Below, one piece after another: positions 2,726 to 30,030 of a DNA stretch of 64,000 nucleotides. Position 1 is the stretch's first letter. Every line of letters begins with the position of its first letter. This DNA is from Haliotis rubra (lineage: Eukaryota). The stretch lies in NCBI RefSeq assembly GCF_003918875.1, contig NW_025765003.1, forward strand, positions 4,650,001-4,714,000, in the 5' to 3' direction. The position numbers and the translations under genes were made by a program. The notes under the pieces are model-generated. The model was not told the DNA's origin, searched no databases, and worked only from the letters and a program-made list of their open reading frames with translations.

Positions 2726-3660
2726 GAGTCAAATACTGTCAGTCTGAAAAAGAATATGATTAGCATAATATCAACAACATATCTATGTTAAAATTGCAGA
2801 CAAGAGAAAACACGGATATAGGGGATAATTCACCTGGAAAAGAATGCATCAATAAGCAGGAAGTGCACGACTTACTACTCACAGTCAAAGCAATAGACTA
2901 ATCTTCAGGACATTAAAAGGGGAATGTCTTAAGGTATTTTAGAATATTAAGAAAAGAACCTTATGGTAGTATTCACAGACATACCTAACTATATCCATGA
3001 GGTGACTTTCACCCGAGATAACTTGATGCAATATTTAGAAGGTAAAATATGAAATAATGTTTGTTTTCAACCACTATTATGGGTGATAATTCAGAGGGAT
3101 TTCAAGTGTCATTCATAGTATCTGTTGAAGTCCAGATTACTACACTATAAAAGCGCACATTGACAACAGTGTACACATTAAAAGACAACACCAACAGTAT
3201 TTTAACGTCCACAGTTAAATAAGACCACTGAAATACAGTTATTCCACTATAATACAGGGAAGTCATATTCTGGCCTTGATAAAAACAAGATACAAAAATA
3301 GGGAACTGTAAATTTCTATTTCTTGCCTGCACCAGTTCATTGACTATCTTCCTGTCTCAAAACAACCTCTCACTCACACTTTCAAACGACCAATCCTCCA
3401 CATGCCATAGTAAGTATGTTAAAAAGAGATGGAAATATCATGCAGTATGGCACAATTAATCCATATGGGACATACAAACTACTATGGATTTTGATTCTGC
3501 TATGAGAATAAAAGGGTGGTATGACATGAACAAAACTTCTGACGTCGATGTTGATAAAAAGTCAGGCTGTAACTCTGATAGAATTTTAGGTAAGTTTTGG
3601 AGTTATTTTACCCCCATGGTTATCACCATAGTATCCTTCATTCTTTCTTGTTATTTAGTT

Positions 3661-6600
3661 TCAGTAAGGGGAATAGTAGGCTGCTCTTCGGTATCTCCTG
3701 AAACAAACAATTGTTCTCAATTTAACAAAGACTGACAAAAAGCATAACCTCAAATATTATGTCCAAGATATTTTTATGGATTAAACTTCTTTTTAATTTC
3801 TCTCAACGTTTCGAGACCATTCCAGGTCCCTTCATCAGGTGAACTGGCAGTTAAGACTATGACGTCGTCACTATGACGTCATAACTGAGTTATGACGTCA
3901 CAATGCAAGTGACATCACAGTACACTGGGGAGAGTACTGTATAAGTGAGTTTGAAGAGTTAATTACATAATGATGAAAATTCATGCTAAAGTGACGACGT
4001 CATAGTCCTAACTGCCAGTTCACCTGATGAAGGGACCTGGAATGGTCTCGAAACGTCGTGAGAGAAATTAAAAAGAAGTTTAATCCATAAAAATATCTTG
4101 GACATCAATGTACAACTTCTAAATGCCACTGAAAGACCTCAAATATTATATGTTTCCTCAATGTTTCAAAGTTTACTAACATTTCATTACTACTGATCTT
4201 GTGCAGATAAAGGTCTTGATGTAACATTTTACCGACAAAATGAAGCACTGAGTACACATCATTACTTAGGATACCTTCAGGAAACTACATACTATACTTG
4301 TTTGTACCTACACATCACAAGTCACAAGCGACTGAAGAATGACAACTGTAGCAATGTTAACAGAAGTGATTTTTACTTCTGAATTCTTGGAGAAGAAATG
4401 TATCATCATAAGAGACATCTGCACTGACATGATATAACATAACACATTGTAATTATGTTTACATGTCAACAACAATATCTACAACAAAAGCTACACTCTT
4501 CCTGTTTATGAAACAGAAAGTATAAAAGAAAATAATGAAAACAGGTTTTTTAGTCTGAACCAGTGAGATTTTTTCATCAAAACCCTAGATAAGTCATAAT
4601 TAATTGCAGTTAGGTATGAATAGTAACTGCTCATTGTGTCTCCCAAATATCTGGGGATGTAGGTTTTTTGTTTCATAATGGCATATATTTAGAGCTATAT
4701 CATTCCAAAAATACAAAGGAAAACATGACGAAGTGAAAATTTATCAGTTGAAGGTATTAAAACATTTTCAAAATATCTATGATTGCATGGTAATACAACA
4801 TCAACTCTAGTCAGCAGAATGTCTGACTGATATGAAGATGTTTGATCAATGTAGATATTACAGAACAGAAAATTTCCTAATTCGTCTTTCAGCAAGGCGT
4901 GTAAGCACTAAGAAAAGTATGTGTTTTACTAGAATTGTGAGAACAAATTCCAGGTCTCTGCTATTAATCATTTGAAAGGAAACTACTTTAGGTTAATAAA
5001 ATACATACAATTCCCAAATTTAAAGTAACTTGGCAAAACATCAAAAAGAAAGGTAACAAACCCATATGGTCTTCTTCCCCTGGGGTTAAACCCACGTCCC
5101 CTGCCTCTGCCTCTACTGCGTGGGAAGCGATTTGTGGAACTAATGCCTGGCCTATTTGTCCGTTTTGGAGAGACCTGAAACCATAAAATGGATCTGAAAT
5201 AAATAAACAATCCATACACTGTACACTCATTTGAGATGAGTTTCTATGAAAACCATATGGTATAAACAATACATCTAGCATCACAACCTAAGACACTAGC
5301 ATAGATTATTAATTCTCTCAGAGCTGTTCTAAATTGGTGTGTATGAAGGTAAGAAAAAAAAGAAAATTACCAGCTTTACTAAAGGACTAATGCTGCTTTA
5401 CCTTAATTTGTCGACCTCTGAAAAGTGAGTCATCCAAAGCCATTGCAGTTGCAACTGAATCTTTGTCAGCAAATTCAATATATGCAAATCTGGAACAAAA
5501 CATTTGTCTTGAATTAGAAAATCGAAAAAACTGTTGCAGTATTTCTTTGGAAGCACAAAATATGAACATGATCATGATGGTCAGCTGATAATAGAAAGCC
5601 ATTTCTCCAAGATCAGCAGCATATGTTACAATCACAGAGGATCAGAAGTCCAACATGTGTAAACATCATTTCTTGGAATAATCTATCTATAAATAATATG
5701 GACACGTAAAGATGGGGTGTTGGGGGGCATGGTGTATATATGTGTATGTGTGTGTGCATTTCTTTTCAGCTAGGGCAAACAGATAGTCTTTCAAAATATG
5801 CCTTACAACTGTCATACGAAAAACCATGCACTATTTGAAAGCTAAAAACTTATCTAAGGTATTTTTATAATCACTACATGCAGGTGCGTTTGATAATGGT
5901 GAGATCTTTGAAAGTCACAATTTTTCTGAAATCCTAAATAGAAGAAACACAATCAGGAACCAGGTACAGAGATAACTTTAATCATACTGAAAATTCAGCA
6001 TTTCTCCAAGATCAGTAGCGGTTATGTTACAATCACAAAGGATCAGAAGTCCAACATGTGCAAACATCACTTCTTGGTAAAATCTATCTATAAATAATAT
6101 GGACACGTAAAGATGGGGTGTTGGGGGGCATGGTGTATATATGTGTATGTGTGTGCGTGCATTTCTTTTCAGCTAGGGCAAACAGATAGTCTTTCAAAAT
6201 ATGCCTTACAACTGTCATACGAAAAACCATGCACTATTTGAAAGCTAAAAACTTATCTAAGGTATTTTTATAATCACTACATGCAGGTGCGTTTGATAAT
6301 GGTGAGATCTTTGAAAGTCACAATTTTTCTGAAATCCTAAATAGAAGAAACACAATCAGGAACCAGGTACAGAGATATGTTTAATCATATTGAAAATTCA
6401 GCATTTCCCCAAGATCAGTAGCGGTTATGTTACAATCACAAAGGATCAGAAGTCCAACATGTGCAAACATCACTTCTTGGAAAATTTTGTCTATCTACAA
6501 ATAATGAGGACAAACATGGTAAAGATATAGGGATGGGGTGTTTGCAGCTAGGGGAAACTGATGGCTTTTTCAAAATACATCTTTCAAAATTCATACACAA

Positions 6601-9600
6601 AACATGGCAATATTTGAAAGCTAGTAACTTATTCAGGGTAATATTCAGGATCACTATATGTATGATTTACAATGGTGAAATCTTTGAAAGTCCAATATTC
6701 CCAGAACCTCTATTTCCTTACAATGCTTCTTACAAAACTTAAACATGTTGCAGATGAAAAACAAATGCACACTGCAAACCAGAAACTTATTAAGAGGGTC
6801 ATTTTCTAACAGCGGACAGGGAATATTTTAGTTTTTGCAACATACAAGGTAATAGACTGAATAAACATGCAGTGCCATAAGAAGAGTCATGTTCTAAAAC
6901 CGTCTGTTGAAACTCCAAACTTATTTTCAGGGTTTTTTTGCTGATGACTACACATAATATCTTGACCAATTCAAAGACCCCTTTTCTTCGTTCTTAGGGA
7001 AACAATCATATATAGATGTGTAAATCTTGAAAATTTGTATAGGTCTCCAAGATCAGTAGCGGATATGTTACAATCACAGAGGATCAGAAGTCCAACATGT
7101 GCAAACATCATTTCTTGGGATATCAGAATCATGTATCTCCTATCTTGACAAACTTTTAAAATTGCACCTTTTGAAGATGAGCAGTACATTCCTTGCAGCC
7201 ATAAGGTAACTATATGTTTGAGCAACACTGAAAGTTTGACAAATAATGCAGTTTCAAGAGTTATATTCTGGCAACTGGCATGTTGTAAAACATGGTTTGC
7301 ATACTGCCTTCATAGATTTCCAAATGTTTCAATACTAGTCAAAACTTGGAGTGAGTGAGTATAACTTTACCCTGCTTTAGCGATATTCCAGGAACATGGT
7401 GTGGGACACCAGAAATAGTCTTCACACATTGTACCCATGTGGGGAATCCAACCCGGGCCTTCAGCGTTACGAGCGAACGTTTTAACCACTTAGTTAACCC
7501 ACTGCCCCAGTCAAACTTGGGAATCTTTCAATTTGCATCAACAACTATGTTAGTTACAACTATTCAACTTTTGTTCAGCCAATACTTCTGTGATTGTTTC
7601 AGAATGATGTAGTCTTTGAAAGACACCATCCTCTTAGCAATTCTTTGTGGAATAACAAGAAAAAACAGAAAACTCTACCAGGTACAGATATAACTTTGCA
7701 TGGTTGAAAGTACTTTTTTCTCCAAGATCAGCAGTGGTTATGTTACAATCATGGAAAATCAGAAGTCCAACATGTGAAACATCACTTCTTGGAATATGTT
7801 AGCTAAAACTCCAAAGTAGAATCTGACAAGCCTTAAATCATACATGACATTCAAAGATAACGCACCCCTTTGGATGGCCTGTGAATTTGTCACATAGTAT
7901 GGTCACTCGGTTCACAGAGCCACATCCATGAAAATGTTGCTCCAATTCTTCTGCTGTGGCACCGTAATCAACCTAAAACATTCACTCTAATGTTAAAAGA
8001 GCAATTTTGCACAAAAGTGATAAACACAATCAGACAAAAGAAAATACTAAGATTCATAAATTTTTAAAAAAGCATAAATGGGTAGCAGTAATATCAATGT
8101 AAAATATTTCATGATGAAGGTTGGAATGCTTAAAATTTTTCATACACATTTGAAGGTGGTTGCTTTTTTGTGAAATGTTAAGTAAGAGGGGAATTAACAC
8201 TATGATCAGCTAAAAACACTTGTCAATGCTGAGGTGATATGGGAATTGGGTCACTCACACAGTGCAGTATTGGTACAAATAAAATGCAATGGAAGTTTGA
8301 CTTGCCATACCACACGTACCAAAATTATGTACAGAAAATATTAATACTAACTTAAGCAATCGACATTGTAAAATAGGACTGTCGTTACCAATAATGTACT
8401 CACATTACCACAATATATTGAACGAGCATCAGCTTCTATTTTTTCATCAACGCTTGGAAAAGATGCTGAAATGAACAGGTCTGTCTGTGTAAAGTTTGGA
8501 GTAAGTTACAATTTATAGGACTGATAAGTCTCATGATAGAGGTCTATTGACCTTATTATTTGATTGAAGTTTTAGACTTGTGTATTTAACACATTCAATG
8601 GTGAAAAACAACATATAGAAAGCCACAAAGTATTTAATTAAGCCAATAAACAAATTATTTCATGGGGTTTGATGTTCTACATGCTGGAAGATACCTATAA
8701 TTGAAGTACTTGTCAAGTTTAAGTTTCTTTAATTGAATGTAGAGAAATGTGTTGGCTGTTAAACTAATAAACCTATTAAAAAAAACCAAAACATTACATG
8801 TAGAACGCTCATCCATAATTCTCAACATTGTTAGCCAATTTCAATCAGGGCATACCAGTCCTAAAACAATACATTTCTAATCATGGCAAAGGTTGATAAC
8901 TGGACATGTAAATGAATAAAAATACAAATTCTTAGCATGCCAACAAAGCTTTTGATACTGATGCCATTGATCCTGTTGATGGATGATGTTTTGAGCAAAG
9001 TGATTAAAACTTATGATGAAAATCCAAATGGTTTCTTAACACTGCACAGTGTCAAAAGAACAATGTTCATCGTGTCTTTACTGACTAAAACCCACATATA
9101 GATGAAGAGCTCATATTCATTTGACTATCAACTTCTTTCTGCATTTCTTTCAATTTTTCAGCTTCTTCTTCCATTTCTTTGACCCTGGCTTTGATAGCCT
9201 CAAGTTCCTGCAACAGTCATCAAATATCTCATTGTTGTCACAACATATATAACAGATGCTGCCTCAGAAGGTTCGAGTGTGACAATCTGACAAGTGTTTA
9301 GTGAAACATCATTGTTCGCAGATTAAATATTGTTCAAAAGATTTTTTGGTTTTTTTCTTTGAATCGTCAGGAATTGTTGCAGCAGTAGAGATGGAGAACA
9401 CAGTTCAATCATCTGCACGAACTAGTACATATCGAGACGCTCAGTAGGCGTATATTTGAACCTAACCAAACTTTTTAACGAAATATAAGAATCTATCTAT
9501 TGTGATTAAACAGCTGTAGGCATGTTTCAAGTGTATATCTTGTATATTCATACAGACCGGATCTTCCACGCCAACATCTTCAGATACTATTGCACTGGTG

Positions 9601-9698
9601 TCGGCGTCAGTGGCTTCGGGATCAAACTGACTCGTGTCGAAATCTCCATTGGTTTCTGTAAAACTTTCTTCCTGATCACCATTTTCAATATCGGCCAT
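3661..9698 (-). CDS. PABPN1: Nuclear poly(A)-binding protein 1 (PABP2), 7 coding exons, 219 aa
   Basis: Exons 9698-9558, 9207-9096, 8465-8404, 7972-7866, 5489-5402, 5174-5062 and 3697-3661 all have GT-AG introns with matching phases (660 nt). The protein has an acidic N-terminus, coiled coil [29 protein letters not shown] ([52 protein letters not shown]) and an RG-rich tail ending RRAAYYSPY*. Confidence 0.97.
3761..4135. mobile_element. Foldback Penelope-like-element remnant with hammerhead motifs in both arms
   Basis: Inverted arms of about 113 bp (3760-3872 and 3990-4104) flanked by the 14-bp direct repeat ACCTCAAATATTAT (3747-3760, 4136-4149). Confidence 0.75.
4020..4061 (+). ncRNA. Minimal type I hammerhead ribozyme (PLE type)
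   Basis: TCAC-CTGATGA-A-GGGACC(tggaat)GGTCTC-GAAA-CG-TC-GTGA: stem I TCAC/GTGA, 6-bp stem II, palindromic minimal stem III, GUC cleavage triplet. Confidence 0.75.
5606..5677 (-). ncRNA. Box C/D snoRNA copy 1, SNORD104/snR58-like
   Basis: Terminal stem TCCAAGA/TCTTGGA, box C ATGATGT, guide ACACATGTTGGACTT, D' CTGA, C' GTGATT, box D CTGA. Lies in PABPN1 intron 4 in the host's sense orientation. Confidence 0.85.
6006..6077 (-). ncRNA. Box C/D snoRNA copy 2, SNORD104/snR58-like
   Basis: CCAAGA stem, box C GTGATGT, guide GCACATGTTGGACTT-CTGA complementary to 28S GAGUCUAACAUGUGC (one internal G:U), C' GTGATT, box D CTGA. Confidence 0.88.
6409..6480 (-). ncRNA. Box C/D snoRNA copy 3, SNORD104/snR58-like
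   Basis: Same boxes, guide and terminal stem as copy 2. Confidence 0.88.
7047..7118 (-). ncRNA. Box C/D snoRNA copy 4, SNORD104/snR58-like
   Basis: Box C ATGATGT, guide GCACATGTTGGACTT, D' CTGA, C' GTGATT, D CTGA and CCAAG stem. The flanks have diverged while the snoRNA is conserved. Confidence 0.87.
7721..7793 (-). ncRNA. Box C/D snoRNA copy 5, SNORD104/snR58-like
   Basis: Box C GTGATGT, guide CACATGTTGGACTT, D' CTGA, C' ATGATT, D CTGA and TCCAAGA stem. Starts about 70 nt downstream of the exon 4 donor. Confidence 0.83.
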
Positions 9699-9719
9699 AT
9701 TTACGAAATAAATATACAC

Positions 9720-9900
9720 TTAGACACAAAAATGGAGGACTGTATGATTAAGAGAGGGATAAAATATGATAAAACAAATATGATTAAACAATAAGAGAGT
9801 AGTTAGTCTCTCGATGGTAAGGATTAAGAGACAGCCGTTAAGCGGCAGACAAAGAGACGCTCGTCGAACAATTTGTCAACTTCCGGTTACGTTCGGAAAA
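9720..9900 (-). promoter_or_regulatory. Putative PABPN1 promoter/5' region with YY1-like and ETS motifs
   Basis: CAAAATGGAG (YY1-like, 9727-9737) and ACTTCCGG (ETS/GABP, about 9879-9886) in a locally CpG-rich stretch upstream of the ATG. Confidence 0.4.
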
Positions 9901-11115
9901 CCTCGTCTATGTGTCGGATCTTCGATTTTCCGACAATCGTCTTACCACCATTGTACAACTCGGACACGAGCGAGATAAATAATTCATTTTATATAATCTA
10001 CATATATACATGAACATATGCTTTGACACATGCACAACAAGCTACAACAAGCTGGTGTTTAAATGTATTAGCAGGCTTCACTTTGCGGACTTTATTACTG
10101 GTGTGTTCCGATTGCTTACACACGGGATGAGAGTAGCCGCCCTTTGAAAATACAAACAAAACATAAAAGAACAGACAAGAAAAAACAAAACAAGAGTAGC
10201 TAAAGCAAAATTTATGAAAAAAAGCAGAGGCGTGTCATTTTACCTCCTGTCGAAGTTATATATATAAATAAAGGATCAGGGTAAAATAATCCGAAGAGAT
10301 TTTCATTTTTAGAAGAGGCCCCCATCCGATGTTATCTTACATAGAGTCGGCATTTTGCGAGTTCATCTACGGAAAACACGTTGTTAAACATAATATACAG
10401 CGACATATGTCTTGTGATAAAATGGGAGTAGATTTACACTAATAAATATCTTCAGAGATTAAATGTTAAAATAGTAACTGGATAATGATGTTACGAATTT
10501 AGGCCATTAAGAAATTTAGATTTCTTCTGTCATATTTAAATAGTGATAGTATGTATCCTTTGATCTTGTTTATATTACATGTCATTTGGTGAAAGAGATC
10601 TGAAATCTAGTGCTAATATATATGAATGTCAAACATGCGTTAAATGAACTAACTATTAACAATTAACTGAGAGTAATTCATAGACGCTTACATTGTAACT
10701 CCAGCTTTTGGTGAGTTTATCCATATATATTAAAGGACCCTGAGAACTTCAACATTGTATTGTATGTTATTGTGTAAAACATCCCTAAAAGATGTATTCA
10801 TTTGAATATATGTCTGTTCAGAAAGTTTCTAAGATAAAACATGGTTATCAAAAGATTTTACCCGGAAAACACTAAGGAACATTTTGACACAAACAATTGG
10901 TGAAAATTGATCATATCGCATGCGAAAAGTAGGAAGTCTAGTTCATGATTTACACCTGTGTTTTGCACTATCATATCTGTAAATGATTCAGATGAAACCG
11001 TATTTGATTTCATACTTATTTTGCAAATCAAGCGACCGTGGTCGAACCCATAAGATGAACCCTGATGTCTTGAGAGAAAAGTCGACCCCGCAGATTAACA
11101 TGTTAGCATCACAAG

Positions 11116-16144: not shown

Positions 16145-30030
<13,886 letters not shown>

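What the first reader, a model, noticed from the sequence alone, without database searches (positions are those of the whole stretch)
5606..7793. Five SNORD104/snR58-like box C/D snoRNAs packed into one PABPN1 intron
Seen: five ~72-nt units on the host strand within intron 4 (5490-7865). Each has a terminal CCAAG/CTTGG stem, box C RTGATGT, D' CTGA, C' RTGATT and D CTGA. The D' guide core CACATGTTGGACTT is invariant while the spacers of copies 3-5 have drifted, which indicates purifying selection on the RNA. Known: the conserved LSU rRNA segment GGAGUCUAAC is 2'-O-methylated at the C by yeast snR58 (Cm663) and human SNORD104. The D+5 rule places the target here on that same C. Inference: this is a polycistronic intronic snoRNA array, departing from the vertebrate one-snoRNA-per-intron pattern, in a host gene I do not know as a SNORD104 host (human SNORD104 lies in a non-coding host). 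Release of five RNAs from one lariat would need endonucleolytic cuts or hidden splice sites.
Basis: partly seen in the sequence, partly recalled or inferred. Interest (0 to 1): 0.85.

Follow-up and report, generated by a model that had tools for sequence, protein, structure and literature searches.

The report
Five-copy rRNA-methylation guide array in PABPN1
One intron of this mollusc's PABPN1 gene carries five intact copies of a small nucleolar RNA predicted to guide methylation of one conserved cytidine in large-subunit rRNA; the same RNA also sits, often in several copies, in PABPN1 introns of a deep-sea snail and a scallop, so it is a real, conserved but essentially ordinary kind of gene cluster.

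Summary
Five 72-74-nt box C/D units lie on the minus (host) strand at 5606-5677, 6005-6078, 6408-6481, 7046-7119 and 7721-7793. All have box C, a 14-nt guide, D', C', box D and a 7-bp terminal stem.

RNA contigs from three runs join 5489 directly to 7866. The whole 2376-nt intron 4 of a PABPN1 orthologue is therefore removed as one piece in the main mRNA.

Old copies are 84-94% identical to each other while their flanks are at background (about 50%). Variable columns avoid the functional elements (2 of 48 against 12 of 26). Copies 1-3 also reflect a recent 403-nt tandem duplication.

A model built from the five copies finds the same RNA in other PABPN1 genes: 13 copies in intron 5 of Gigantopelta aegis, five copies in introns 3 and 6 of Argopecten irradians, and copies on five metagenomic contigs. 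The terminal stem covaries across these. Patella, a chiton and an annelid lack it.

The closest Rfam family is the fly Me28S-Cm788 guide, below threshold. Intronic snoRNA clusters are already described in rice and Drosophila.

Not shown here: mature 70-nt RNAs, the species' 28S sequence, and how the five copies are released.

First-stage notes report similar arrays elsewhere in this genome.

The parts
5606..5677 (-). snoRNA copy 1 (72 nt), the copy nearest the 3' end of the intron, 116 nt upstream of the 3' splice site
   Evidence: Model R1 scores 104.6 bits. All boxes and the stem are intact. An RNA contig covers 5500-5699.
6005..6078 (-). snoRNA copy 2 (74 nt), product of the recent 403-nt tandem duplication
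   Evidence: R1 scores 110.3 bits. It is 99% identical to copy 3. No contig independent of the assembly covers it.
6408..6481 (-). snoRNA copy 3 (74 nt)
   Evidence: R1 scores 111.9 bits. RNA contig 6355-6708 and DNA contig 6190-6474 cover it.
7046..7119 (-). snoRNA copy 4 (74 nt)
   Evidence: R1 scores 110.1 bits. RNA contig 6956-7113 and DNA contig 6453-7427 cover it.
7721..7793 (-). snoRNA copy 5 (73 nt), the first copy in the intron, 72 nt downstream of the 5' splice site
   Evidence: R1 scores 103.4 bits. DNA contigs 7635-7776 and 7777-9800 cover it.
5490..7865 (-). Host intron 4 of the PABPN1 orthologue (2376 nt), GT..AG on the minus strand
   Evidence: Joint 5489|7866 in X1, X2 and X3 at depth 29-35, equal to the neighbouring exons.
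7866..7970 (-). PABPN1 exon 4 (first half of the RRM)
   Evidence: Joints. The RRM_1 Pfam hit is below the curated cut-off (16.8 against 20.7 bits). It is 85-90% identical to named mollusc polyadenylate-binding protein 2.
5400..5489 (-). PABPN1 exon 5 (second half of the RRM)
   Evidence: Joints. The RRM_1 Pfam hit sits at the curated cut-off (20.7 bits). phmmer gives 366 hits, the best being PABPN1 fragments.
5600..6485 (.). Recent tandem duplication, 403-nt unit x 2.2 at 96% identity. Its limits lie inside snoRNA copies, which suggests unequal crossing-over between copies.
   Evidence: Copy 1 differs from copy 2 mainly in its last 16 nt, outside the duplicated stretch.
7340..7515 (.). Highly repeated interspersed element inserted between copies 4 and 5. 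It is not part of the snoRNA system.
   Evidence: Word depth is 27,000-51,000 in the RNA runs and 1.6 million in X24 for bin 7360-7523, with many loose ends at 7403-7461. ARAGORN finds no tRNA.
5934..5957 (-). Branch-site-like CTGAT plus pyrimidine tract plus AG, 71 nt downstream of copy 2. The same element lies at 6337-6360 after copy 3, and a similar one at 7643-7672, 78 nt after copy 5. These are candidate cryptic 3' splice sites by inference only.
   Evidence: Sequence reading. No RNA joint uses them. There is no counterpart in Gigantopelta or Argopecten.

Best explanation
These are five functional, tandemly duplicated genes for one box C/D snoRNA. They are transcribed as part of the PABPN1 pre-mRNA and lie in a single intron. 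The D' guide (14 nt) is predicted to pair with the conserved large-subunit rRNA segment GAGUCUAACAUGUG. That places fibrillarin-dependent 2'-O-methylation on the C five positions from D', the site guided by yeast snR58 (Cm663), human SNORD104 (Cm1327) and fly Me28S-Cm788. The array grew by unequal crossing-over between copies. The last event was a 403-nt duplication. PABPN1 is an old host of this RNA in molluscs, with copies moving between introns and amplifying independently. Shown here: anatomy, conservation, covariation, removal of the intron as one unit, and recurrence in PABPN1 of other species. Inferred: the rRNA target, the expression of each copy, and the release mechanism. For release I favour debranching and exonuclease trimming from both ends, plus endonucleolytic cuts in the spacers. 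SnoRNA-ended long intermediates are possible.
For: All five copies are complete and the 18-mer is exact. Variable columns number 2 of 48 in boxes, guide and stem against 12 of 26 elsewhere, Fisher p = 2.5e-5. Core identity is 84-94% while flanks are at background. The best Rfam alignments are to snoMe28S-Cm788 and snoR64, running through the guide and boxes. Models R1 and R2 find 13 copies in Gigantopelta PABPN1 intron 5, five in Argopecten PABPN1 introns 3 and 6, one in L004, and copies beside PABPN1 exons on L043, L073, L077, L028 and L055, always on the gene strand. Across 32 distinct sequences the 12-mer ACATGTTAGACT is constant. The 7-bp stem is 96% paired, all 7 pairs change on both sides, and 0 of 500 shuffles reach the covariation score. 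The joint 5489|7866 is seen in three RNA runs. Low-depth RNA contigs cover copies 1, 3 and 4 with their flanks. snR58-Cm663 and SNORD104-Cm1327 come from papers.
Against: No Rfam family reaches its gathering score: 22-28 bits against 45. No discrete ~72-nt RNA was seen, because the runs are assembled contigs, probably of poly(A) libraries. The species' 28S was not available. All five window copies carry G where every other family member has A, which gives a G.U wobble next to the target C. Gene conversion confined to the copies could mimic part of the conservation within the array. The metagenome members were picked with a pattern that fixes box C and the guide, and A6 is fitted to the model, so those counts lean towards the model.
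Confidence: 0.8

Rival explanations
1. There are hidden mini-exons. Each unit keeps its own 3' splice site, and rare or regulated isoforms remove the intron in several pieces. The rule of one snoRNA per spliced intron then still holds, as in non-coding multi-snoRNA hosts.
For: A CTGAT plus pyrimidine tract plus AG lies 71, 71 and 78 nt downstream of copies 2, 3 and 5. To my knowledge this is about the distance at which box C/D snoRNAs usually sit before a 3' splice site. The motif TCTGTACCTGGT just upstream of it is kept between otherwise diverged units.
Against: The only joints across this region in three RNA runs are 5489|7866 and one low-depth copy-to-copy join. No conserved 5' splice site follows the candidate acceptors in all units. 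The candidate sites are not AG|GT recursive sites. No such signal follows the copies in Gigantopelta or Argopecten. Contigs do drop rare variants, so absence is weak evidence.
Confidence: 0.12
2. The excised intron is trimmed only from its ends. It then yields long non-coding RNAs capped by snoRNPs at both ends (sno-lncRNAs, up to 2.19 kb from 7793 to 5606) rather than, or besides, five free snoRNAs.
For: This is the documented outcome in mammals when two snoRNAs share an intron (PMC11028025; PMC4234469 listed). Intronic contigs between the copies exist at 2-3x.
Against: That depth equals the depth of other introns of the gene, so nothing shows accumulation. The libraries probably exclude non-polyadenylated RNA. 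The recurrence of large arrays (13 copies in Gigantopelta) is easier to explain by dosage of the guide itself.
Confidence: 0.25
3. Only one or two copies are expressed and functional. The rest are young or decaying duplicates kept alike by gene conversion.
For: Copies 2 and 3 are 99% identical and belong to a recent duplication. A low-depth contig joins copy 5 to copy 3 in register, as expected from ongoing unequal exchange.
Against: Copies 1, 4 and 5 have flanks at background identity yet keep every box, the guide and the stem. All differences fall in the D'-C' loop, the unused D-side spacer and the outer stem pair.
Confidence: 0.15

Closest known systems
Drosophila snoRNA Me28S-Cm788 (Rfam RF00539)
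   Same: It is the best Rfam match to all five copies, full length. Box C, the guide (ACAUAUGUUAGACU in the family against CACAUGUUGGACUU here), the D' position, C' (UGAUUGUAA) and box D all align. It has the same single-guide D' design.
   Different: Scores are 22-28 bits against a gathering score of 45. The guide differs at the positions where, to my knowledge, fly 28S differs. I could not establish its host gene in the fly.
Yeast snR58 (25S Cm663) and human SNORD104 (28S Cm1327)
   Same: The predicted target nucleotide is the same, in the conserved GGAGUCUAAC segment. The guide-site pairs are confirmed in papers. The sequence context is from my own knowledge.
   Different: Neither name appears among Rfam matches up to E = 10. 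snR58 is independently transcribed. To my knowledge SNORD104 sits alone in an intron of a non-coding host. That host's spliced RNA is PABPN1-sensitive in human cells (SHG104; PMC3499365).
Intronic snoRNA gene clusters of rice and Drosophila
   Same: Several snoRNA genes lie in one intron of a host gene on the host strand (stated in PMC2780460; listed as a class in PMC11028025).
   Different: Here all members are copies of one guide. The host is PABPN1, and the array recurs in different introns of the same host in other molluscs. The original papers were not held, so I could not compare details.
sno-lncRNAs and the SNORD115/116 tandem arrays of mammals
   Same: They are tandem arrays of one box C/D snoRNA. 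Two snoRNAs in one intron protect the stretch between them.
   Different: In SNORD115/116 most copies have their own intron in a non-coding host. No snoRNA-ended long RNA has been shown here.
Plant snoR64/Z200 (Rfam RF00267)
   Same: It is the second-best Rfam family. The guide CACAUGUCAGACUUC aligns with the guide here. The Argopecten copy at L008 3568-3646 scores 38.7 bits and shares the internal hairpin.
   Different: It is below the gathering score of 45. A plant methylation map assigns SnoR64 to another site (U2884; PMC8053127), so functional equivalence is not established.

Membership tests
Box C/D snoRNA (class) | Box C (RUGAUGA) near the 5' end and box D (CUGA) near the 3' end | tested here: met
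   RUGAUGU and CUGA are invariant in all five copies and in all 32 distinct relatives.
Box C/D snoRNA (class) | Short terminal stem that brings boxes C and D together | tested here: met
   The stem is 7 bp and 96-98% paired. Six of 7 (A5) and 7 of 7 (A6) pairs change on both sides, and 0 of 500 shuffles reach the covariation score.
Box C/D snoRNA (class) | Internal D' and C' boxes | tested here: met
   CUGA and UGAUUG are invariant in the window. D' is degenerate (AAGA, AGGA, AUGA) in other species.
Box C/D snoRNA (class) | Antisense element of 10 nt or more before D or D', pairing with rRNA so that the fifth position is the modified nucleotide | tested here: inconclusive
   The 14-nt guide pairs with GAGUCUAACAUGUG (12 Watson-Crick pairs plus 2 G.U) as I know that rRNA segment. 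The 12-mer is constant in all relatives. No 28S of this species, or any LSU sequence, could be fetched.
Box C/D snoRNA (class) | Accumulates as a discrete RNA of about 70 nt bound by fibrillarin and the other core proteins | not testable with these tools
   Only assembled contigs of likely poly(A) libraries were on hand. They give 2-3x contigs over copies 1, 3 and 4 with flanks.
Rfam RF00539 snoMe28S-Cm788 | Score at or above the curated gathering score (45 bits) | tested here: not met
   22.5-28.2 bits. Nothing passes at gathering in the window or in 12 related loci.
Rfam RF00267 snoR64/Z200 | Score at or above the curated gathering score (45 bits) | tested here: not met
   18-24 bits for the window copies and 38.7 bits for one Argopecten copy.
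SNORD104 / snR58 (guides of LSU Cm1327 / Cm663) | Guides methylation of the C in GGAGUCUAAC | tested here: inconclusive
   The position rule puts the target on that C if the rRNA has this sequence. The site-guide pairs come from papers. There are no methylation data.
SNORD104 / snR58 (guides of LSU Cm1327 / Cm663) | Sequence or profile similarity to these RNAs | tested here: not met
   No family of either name appears among 22 matches up to E = 10. I did not check whether Rfam 15 holds such models.
Intronic snoRNA gene cluster | Two or more snoRNA genes within one intron, on the host strand, with the intron removed as a unit | tested here: met
   All five copies lie between 5490 and 7865 on the minus strand. 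The joint 5489|7866 is seen in three runs at exon depth.
sno-lncRNA | Stable intron-derived RNA ending in a snoRNA at each end, without cap or poly(A) | not tested
   No non-poly(A) or read-level data were available. Intron depth is no higher than in other introns.
PABPN1 / polyadenylate-binding protein 2 (host gene) | Acidic N-terminus, coiled-coil exon, single RRM and Arg-rich C-terminus, co-linear with named orthologues | tested here: met
   Six exon matches to named mollusc proteins, with RRM exons 85-90% identical. RRM_1 Pfam hits are at or below the cut-off. Exon joints are seen in RNA.

The most novel reading that the evidence does not exclude
The pairing of this guide with PABPN1 is functional rather than accidental. 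PABPN1 hands nuclear RNAs, including snoRNA-host transcripts, to the exosome. In human cells this includes the SNORD104 host transcript. Hosting a multi-copy array of the equivalent guide in its own pre-mRNA could couple PABPN1 dosage to snoRNA or intron processing. One route would be cleavage of the array in competition with splicing. Another would be snoRNA-ended long RNAs that bind PABPN1 or the exosome. Array size would then be tuned lineage by lineage.
Probability: 0.08. Interest if true: 0.75.

Novelty: new member of a known kind. Interest (0 to 1): 0.42.

Why it matters
Mollusc snoRNAs are almost undescribed. This locus gives a well-supported example of a guide for a conserved LSU methylation site, together with a covariance model that recovers it in gastropods, a bivalve and unidentified metagenomic animals.

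The locus shows three things about how such genes evolve. First, the guide stays in one host gene (PABPN1) across mollusc classes. Second, it moves between introns of that gene. Third, it is amplified independently into tandem arrays of 5 copies here, 13 in Gigantopelta, and 3 plus 2 in Argopecten.

It also offers a simple natural substrate for an open mechanistic question: how animal cells release several snoRNAs from one intron. All five products are near-identical but can be told apart by a few variants.

It does not overturn anything. The kind of organisation is already known from flies and plants, and by unchecked first-stage notes it may be common in this genome.

Tried and rejected
- Rfam at gathering thresholds found nothing in the array or in 12 related loci.
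- Are the spacers decayed copies of exon 5 and its surroundings, which would mean duplication of a snoRNA-plus-exon unit? Local alignment scored no better than shuffles, 20 against 21 +/- 2.6, so I rejected this.
- I tried to obtain an LSU rRNA to test the pairing. Two scans of viral contigs with the conserved 22- and 24-mers found nothing. The one read-laying run had already gone to the locus itself.
- The first route to orthologous loci, through short ORF fragments (P0004, P0006, P0027, P0013, P0082), gave contigs of 0.5-0.9 kb or no DNA. Only L004 was useful.
- Look-ups for Pomacea (P0175) and Saccoglossus (P0206) found no record, so no named non-mollusc could be tested beyond Paralvinella.
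- Model R2 with filters off found nothing in the Patella, Liolophura or Paralvinella PABPN1 loci (best E = 2.4).
- The spacer motifs TCTGTACCTGGT and CTTTCAAAGA are kept between old units in the window but are absent from other species' loci. I did not build on them.
- Cryptic acceptor sites 70-80 nt after the copies are not seen in Gigantopelta or Argopecten.
- Literature on the fly orthologue's host gene gave nothing, and Huang et al. 2005 is not held.
- ARAGORN finds no tRNA in the repeat at 7340-7515.
- Single-sequence folding is uninformative, with z-scores from -0.5 to -1.8, as expected for box C/D RNAs.
Full report
**What is there**

The region 5300-8100 holds five copies of a 72-74-nt unit that read as a box C/D snoRNA on the minus strand. 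From stem to stem they lie at 5606-5677, 6005-6078, 6408-6481, 7046-7119 and 7721-7793.

Each copy has, in order:
- the stem half CCAAGA;
- box C (RTGATGT);
- a 14-nt guide (CACATGTTGGACTT) followed directly by D' (CTGA);
- a short loop;
- C' (TGATTG);
- a 12-14-nt spacer;
- box D (CTGA);
- the stem half TCTTGG.

The 18-mer of guide plus D' occurs exactly five times in the window. Chance would give 0.08.

**Host gene and intron**

The minus strand around the array encodes a PABPN1 (polyadenylate-binding protein 2) orthologue. Six exon matches to named mollusc proteins are co-linear. The RRM exons are 85-90% identical, and the nearest proteins are those of Gigantopelta aegis and Patella vulgata.

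Contigs of three RNA runs of one organism were laid on 4900-9800. They show five joints: 9206|9557, 8465|9096, 7970|8402, 5489|7866 and 5172|5400. All have GT..AG ends on the minus strand and exon-level depth of 29-35.

Copy 5 starts 72 nt after the 5' splice site. Copy 1 ends 116 nt before the 3' splice site.

Low-depth contigs (2-3x) cover copies 1, 3 and 4 with their flanks, at a depth similar to other introns. A run of unstated kind, apparently DNA (about 4-5% diverged), covers copies 3, 4 and 5. Copy 2 has no support outside the assembly.

**History of the array**

Units 1-2-3 contain a 403-nt tandem unit, 2.2 copies at 96% identity. The limits of that unit lie inside snoRNA copies. Copy 1 matches copy 2 at 96% over its first 56 nt and its upstream flank, but differs in its last 16 nt. 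This pattern fits unequal crossing-over between copies.

One low-depth RNA contig joins copy 5 to copy 3 in register through the shared guide. This could be a recombinant allele or a chimera.

The other copies are old. Their 100-nt flanks are 44-61% identical, against a background of 50 +/- 6%, while the snoRNA cores are 84-94% identical. A highly repeated interspersed element has inserted between copies 4 and 5.

**Constraint**

Within the array, 2 of 48 columns in the boxes, guide and stem vary, and both are in the outermost stem pair. Elsewhere 12 of 26 columns vary (Fisher p = 2.5e-5). The variable parts are the D'-C' loop and the spacer before box D. The RNA therefore appears to use only its D' guide. 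Gene conversion could contribute to the likeness of the copies, but it does not explain this pattern.

**Relatives**

I reached orthologous loci in steps:
1. A phmmer search with exon 5 led to a full-length annelid protein.
2. That protein was used to find named orthologues.
3. Their genomic loci were then fetched.

A covariance model of the five window copies (R1) then gave the following results on the gene strand:

| Species or contig | Copies | Position in PABPN1 |
|---|---|---|
| Gigantopelta aegis | 13 | intron 5 |
| Argopecten irradians | 3 + 2 | intron 3 and intron 6 |
| Metagenomic scaffold L004 | 1 | just after exon 5 |

In Gigantopelta, nine of the units form a 445-nt tandem repeat at 99% identity.

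A pattern scan of metagenome contigs followed by the broader model R2 gave 22 matches in 19 loci. Five of those contigs carry PABPN1 exons on the same strand, with the RNA in intron 1, 2 or 3.

The Patella, Liolophura and Paralvinella PABPN1 loci have none, even with filters off.

Across 32 distinct sequences the 12-mer ACATGTTAGACT is constant. The terminal stem is 96% paired, with changes on both sides at all seven pairs, and 0 of 500 shuffles reach the covariation score. Two caveats apply. The metagenome members were selected with box C and the guide fixed. The alignment is also fitted to the model.

PABPN1 is thus a recurrent, probably old, host of this guide in molluscs. The intron varies and amplification is independent in each lineage.

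**Target**

By the position rule for box C/D guides, the nucleotide paired to the fifth guide position upstream of D' is methylated. Against the LSU segment GAGUCUAACAUGUG, which I give from my own knowledge and have not checked with a tool, the guide forms 12 Watson-Crick and 2 G.U pairs. The target is then the C of GAGUC.

Three lines of support:
- Papers confirm snR58 for yeast Cm663 (PMC5344495) and SNORD104 for human Cm1327 (PMC8677024).
- The best Rfam match to every copy is the fly 28S-Cm788 guide, aligned through the guide.
- The plant snoR64 family follows, with a similar guide.

None of these matches reaches a curated threshold.

One oddity remains. All five window copies have G where every other family member has A. 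This puts a G.U wobble next to the target C, unless this species' 28S has changed. I could not obtain any LSU sequence.

**Mechanism**

Shown here: the intron leaves the main mRNA as one piece.

Inferred: after debranching, exonucleases trim to the outermost snoRNPs (copies 5 and 1), and the inner copies need cuts in the spacers. I give three alternatives.

- *SnoRNA-ended long RNAs.* This is the documented fate of two-snoRNA introns in mammals. I give it 0.25 as a significant product.
- *Hidden exons.* Branch-site-like CTGAT, a pyrimidine tract and AG lie 71, 71 and 78 nt after copies 2, 3 and 5. However, no joints use them, and nothing comparable follows the copies in the two other species. 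I give it 0.12.
- *Only some copies active.* I give it 0.15.

**Comparison and novelty**

[quoted passage not shown] It is listed as a class in a 2024 review, which also notes the predominant rule of one snoRNA per intron (PMC11028025).

First-stage notes report other multi-copy intronic snoRNA arrays in this same genome (unchecked). The scan has therefore seen this kind of thing before, on other DNA of this genome.

What is new, as far as I could find, is the host (PABPN1), its recurrence across gastropod and bivalve, and the movement between introns.

One curiosity deserves mention. In human cells the spliced SNORD104 host transcript is one of the RNAs degraded in a PABPN1-dependent way (PMC3499365). 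I treat this as coincidence unless tested.

**Verdict**

This is a real, conserved snoRNA gene array and a new member of a known kind. It is of moderate interest, mainly for snoRNA evolution and as a test case for processing several snoRNAs from one intron.

Noticed in passing
window 7340-7515: An interspersed repeat lies between snoRNA copies 4 and 5, with a stretch that looks to me tRNA-like. Word depth is 1.6 million in DNA run X24 and 27,000-51,000 in the RNA runs, with many loose ends at 7403-7461. ARAGORN calls no tRNA. It is probably a very abundant, expressed SINE.
   Followed up: partly
window 8466-9095 (PABPN1 intron 2): A 677-nt RNA contig covers the whole intron in all three RNA runs at 9-10x, against 20-35x for exons and 0-3x for the other introns. 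This looks like substantial retention of this one intron. To my knowledge mammals autoregulate PABPN1 by retaining a different intron.
   Followed up: no
window 5959-5970, 6362-6373, 7677-7688 (minus); 5905, 6308, 6681, 7613, 5544 (minus): Two short motifs are kept downstream of the snoRNA copies, even between units whose spacers are otherwise at background identity. They are TCTGTACCTGGT (three units) and the palindromic CTTTCAAAGA (four exact copies plus one with a mismatch). The first reads as a 5' splice-site consensus on the opposite strand. Neither occurs in the Gigantopelta or Argopecten loci.
   Followed up: partly
window 7757 joined to 6445 (run X2): One RNA contig (depth 2.6) joins copy 5 to copy 3 in register through the 19 shared letters of the guide ('goes back 1313'). 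It could be an allele made by unequal crossing-over, template switching or an assembly chimera.
   Followed up: no
window, guide position in all five copies (for example 6454 in copy 3): The guide reads GTTGGACT in all five copies, while 27 other distinct family members read GTTAGACT. The change lies next to the predicted methylated C. It means either a shared G.U wobble or a matching change in this species' 28S.
   Followed up: partly
L005 29066-33216 (Gigantopelta aegis, PABPN1 intron 5): A 445-nt unit is repeated 9.3 times at 99% identity, each unit carrying one snoRNA copy. With four more diverged copies at 28202, 33115, 33350 and 34244, the 10.8-kb intron holds 13 copies.
   Followed up: partly
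L008 (Argopecten irradians) 3564-3648, 6631-6714, 7012-7095, 8084-8168, 10515-10598: The scallop copies carry an extra 5-bp hairpin between D' and C'. Four of them share about 20 nt of 3' flank (ACAACTGCTAAATA). They lie in two different introns, so copies have moved within the gene together with a short flank.
   Followed up: no
window 5730-5763 and 6131-6168: GT-rich microsatellite-like stretches lie inside the duplicated spacers. The reads tool skipped them as repeats, and DNA contigs end there. This is why the 5556-6190 zone has no independent coverage.
   Followed up: no
phmmer hits P0016 and P0030: In some unidentified animals the intron between PABPN1 exons 4 and 5 is only about 45-60 nt and stays in frame. 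In many arthropod-like hits it is absent. The intron that hosts the array here is thus variable across animals.
   Followed up: no
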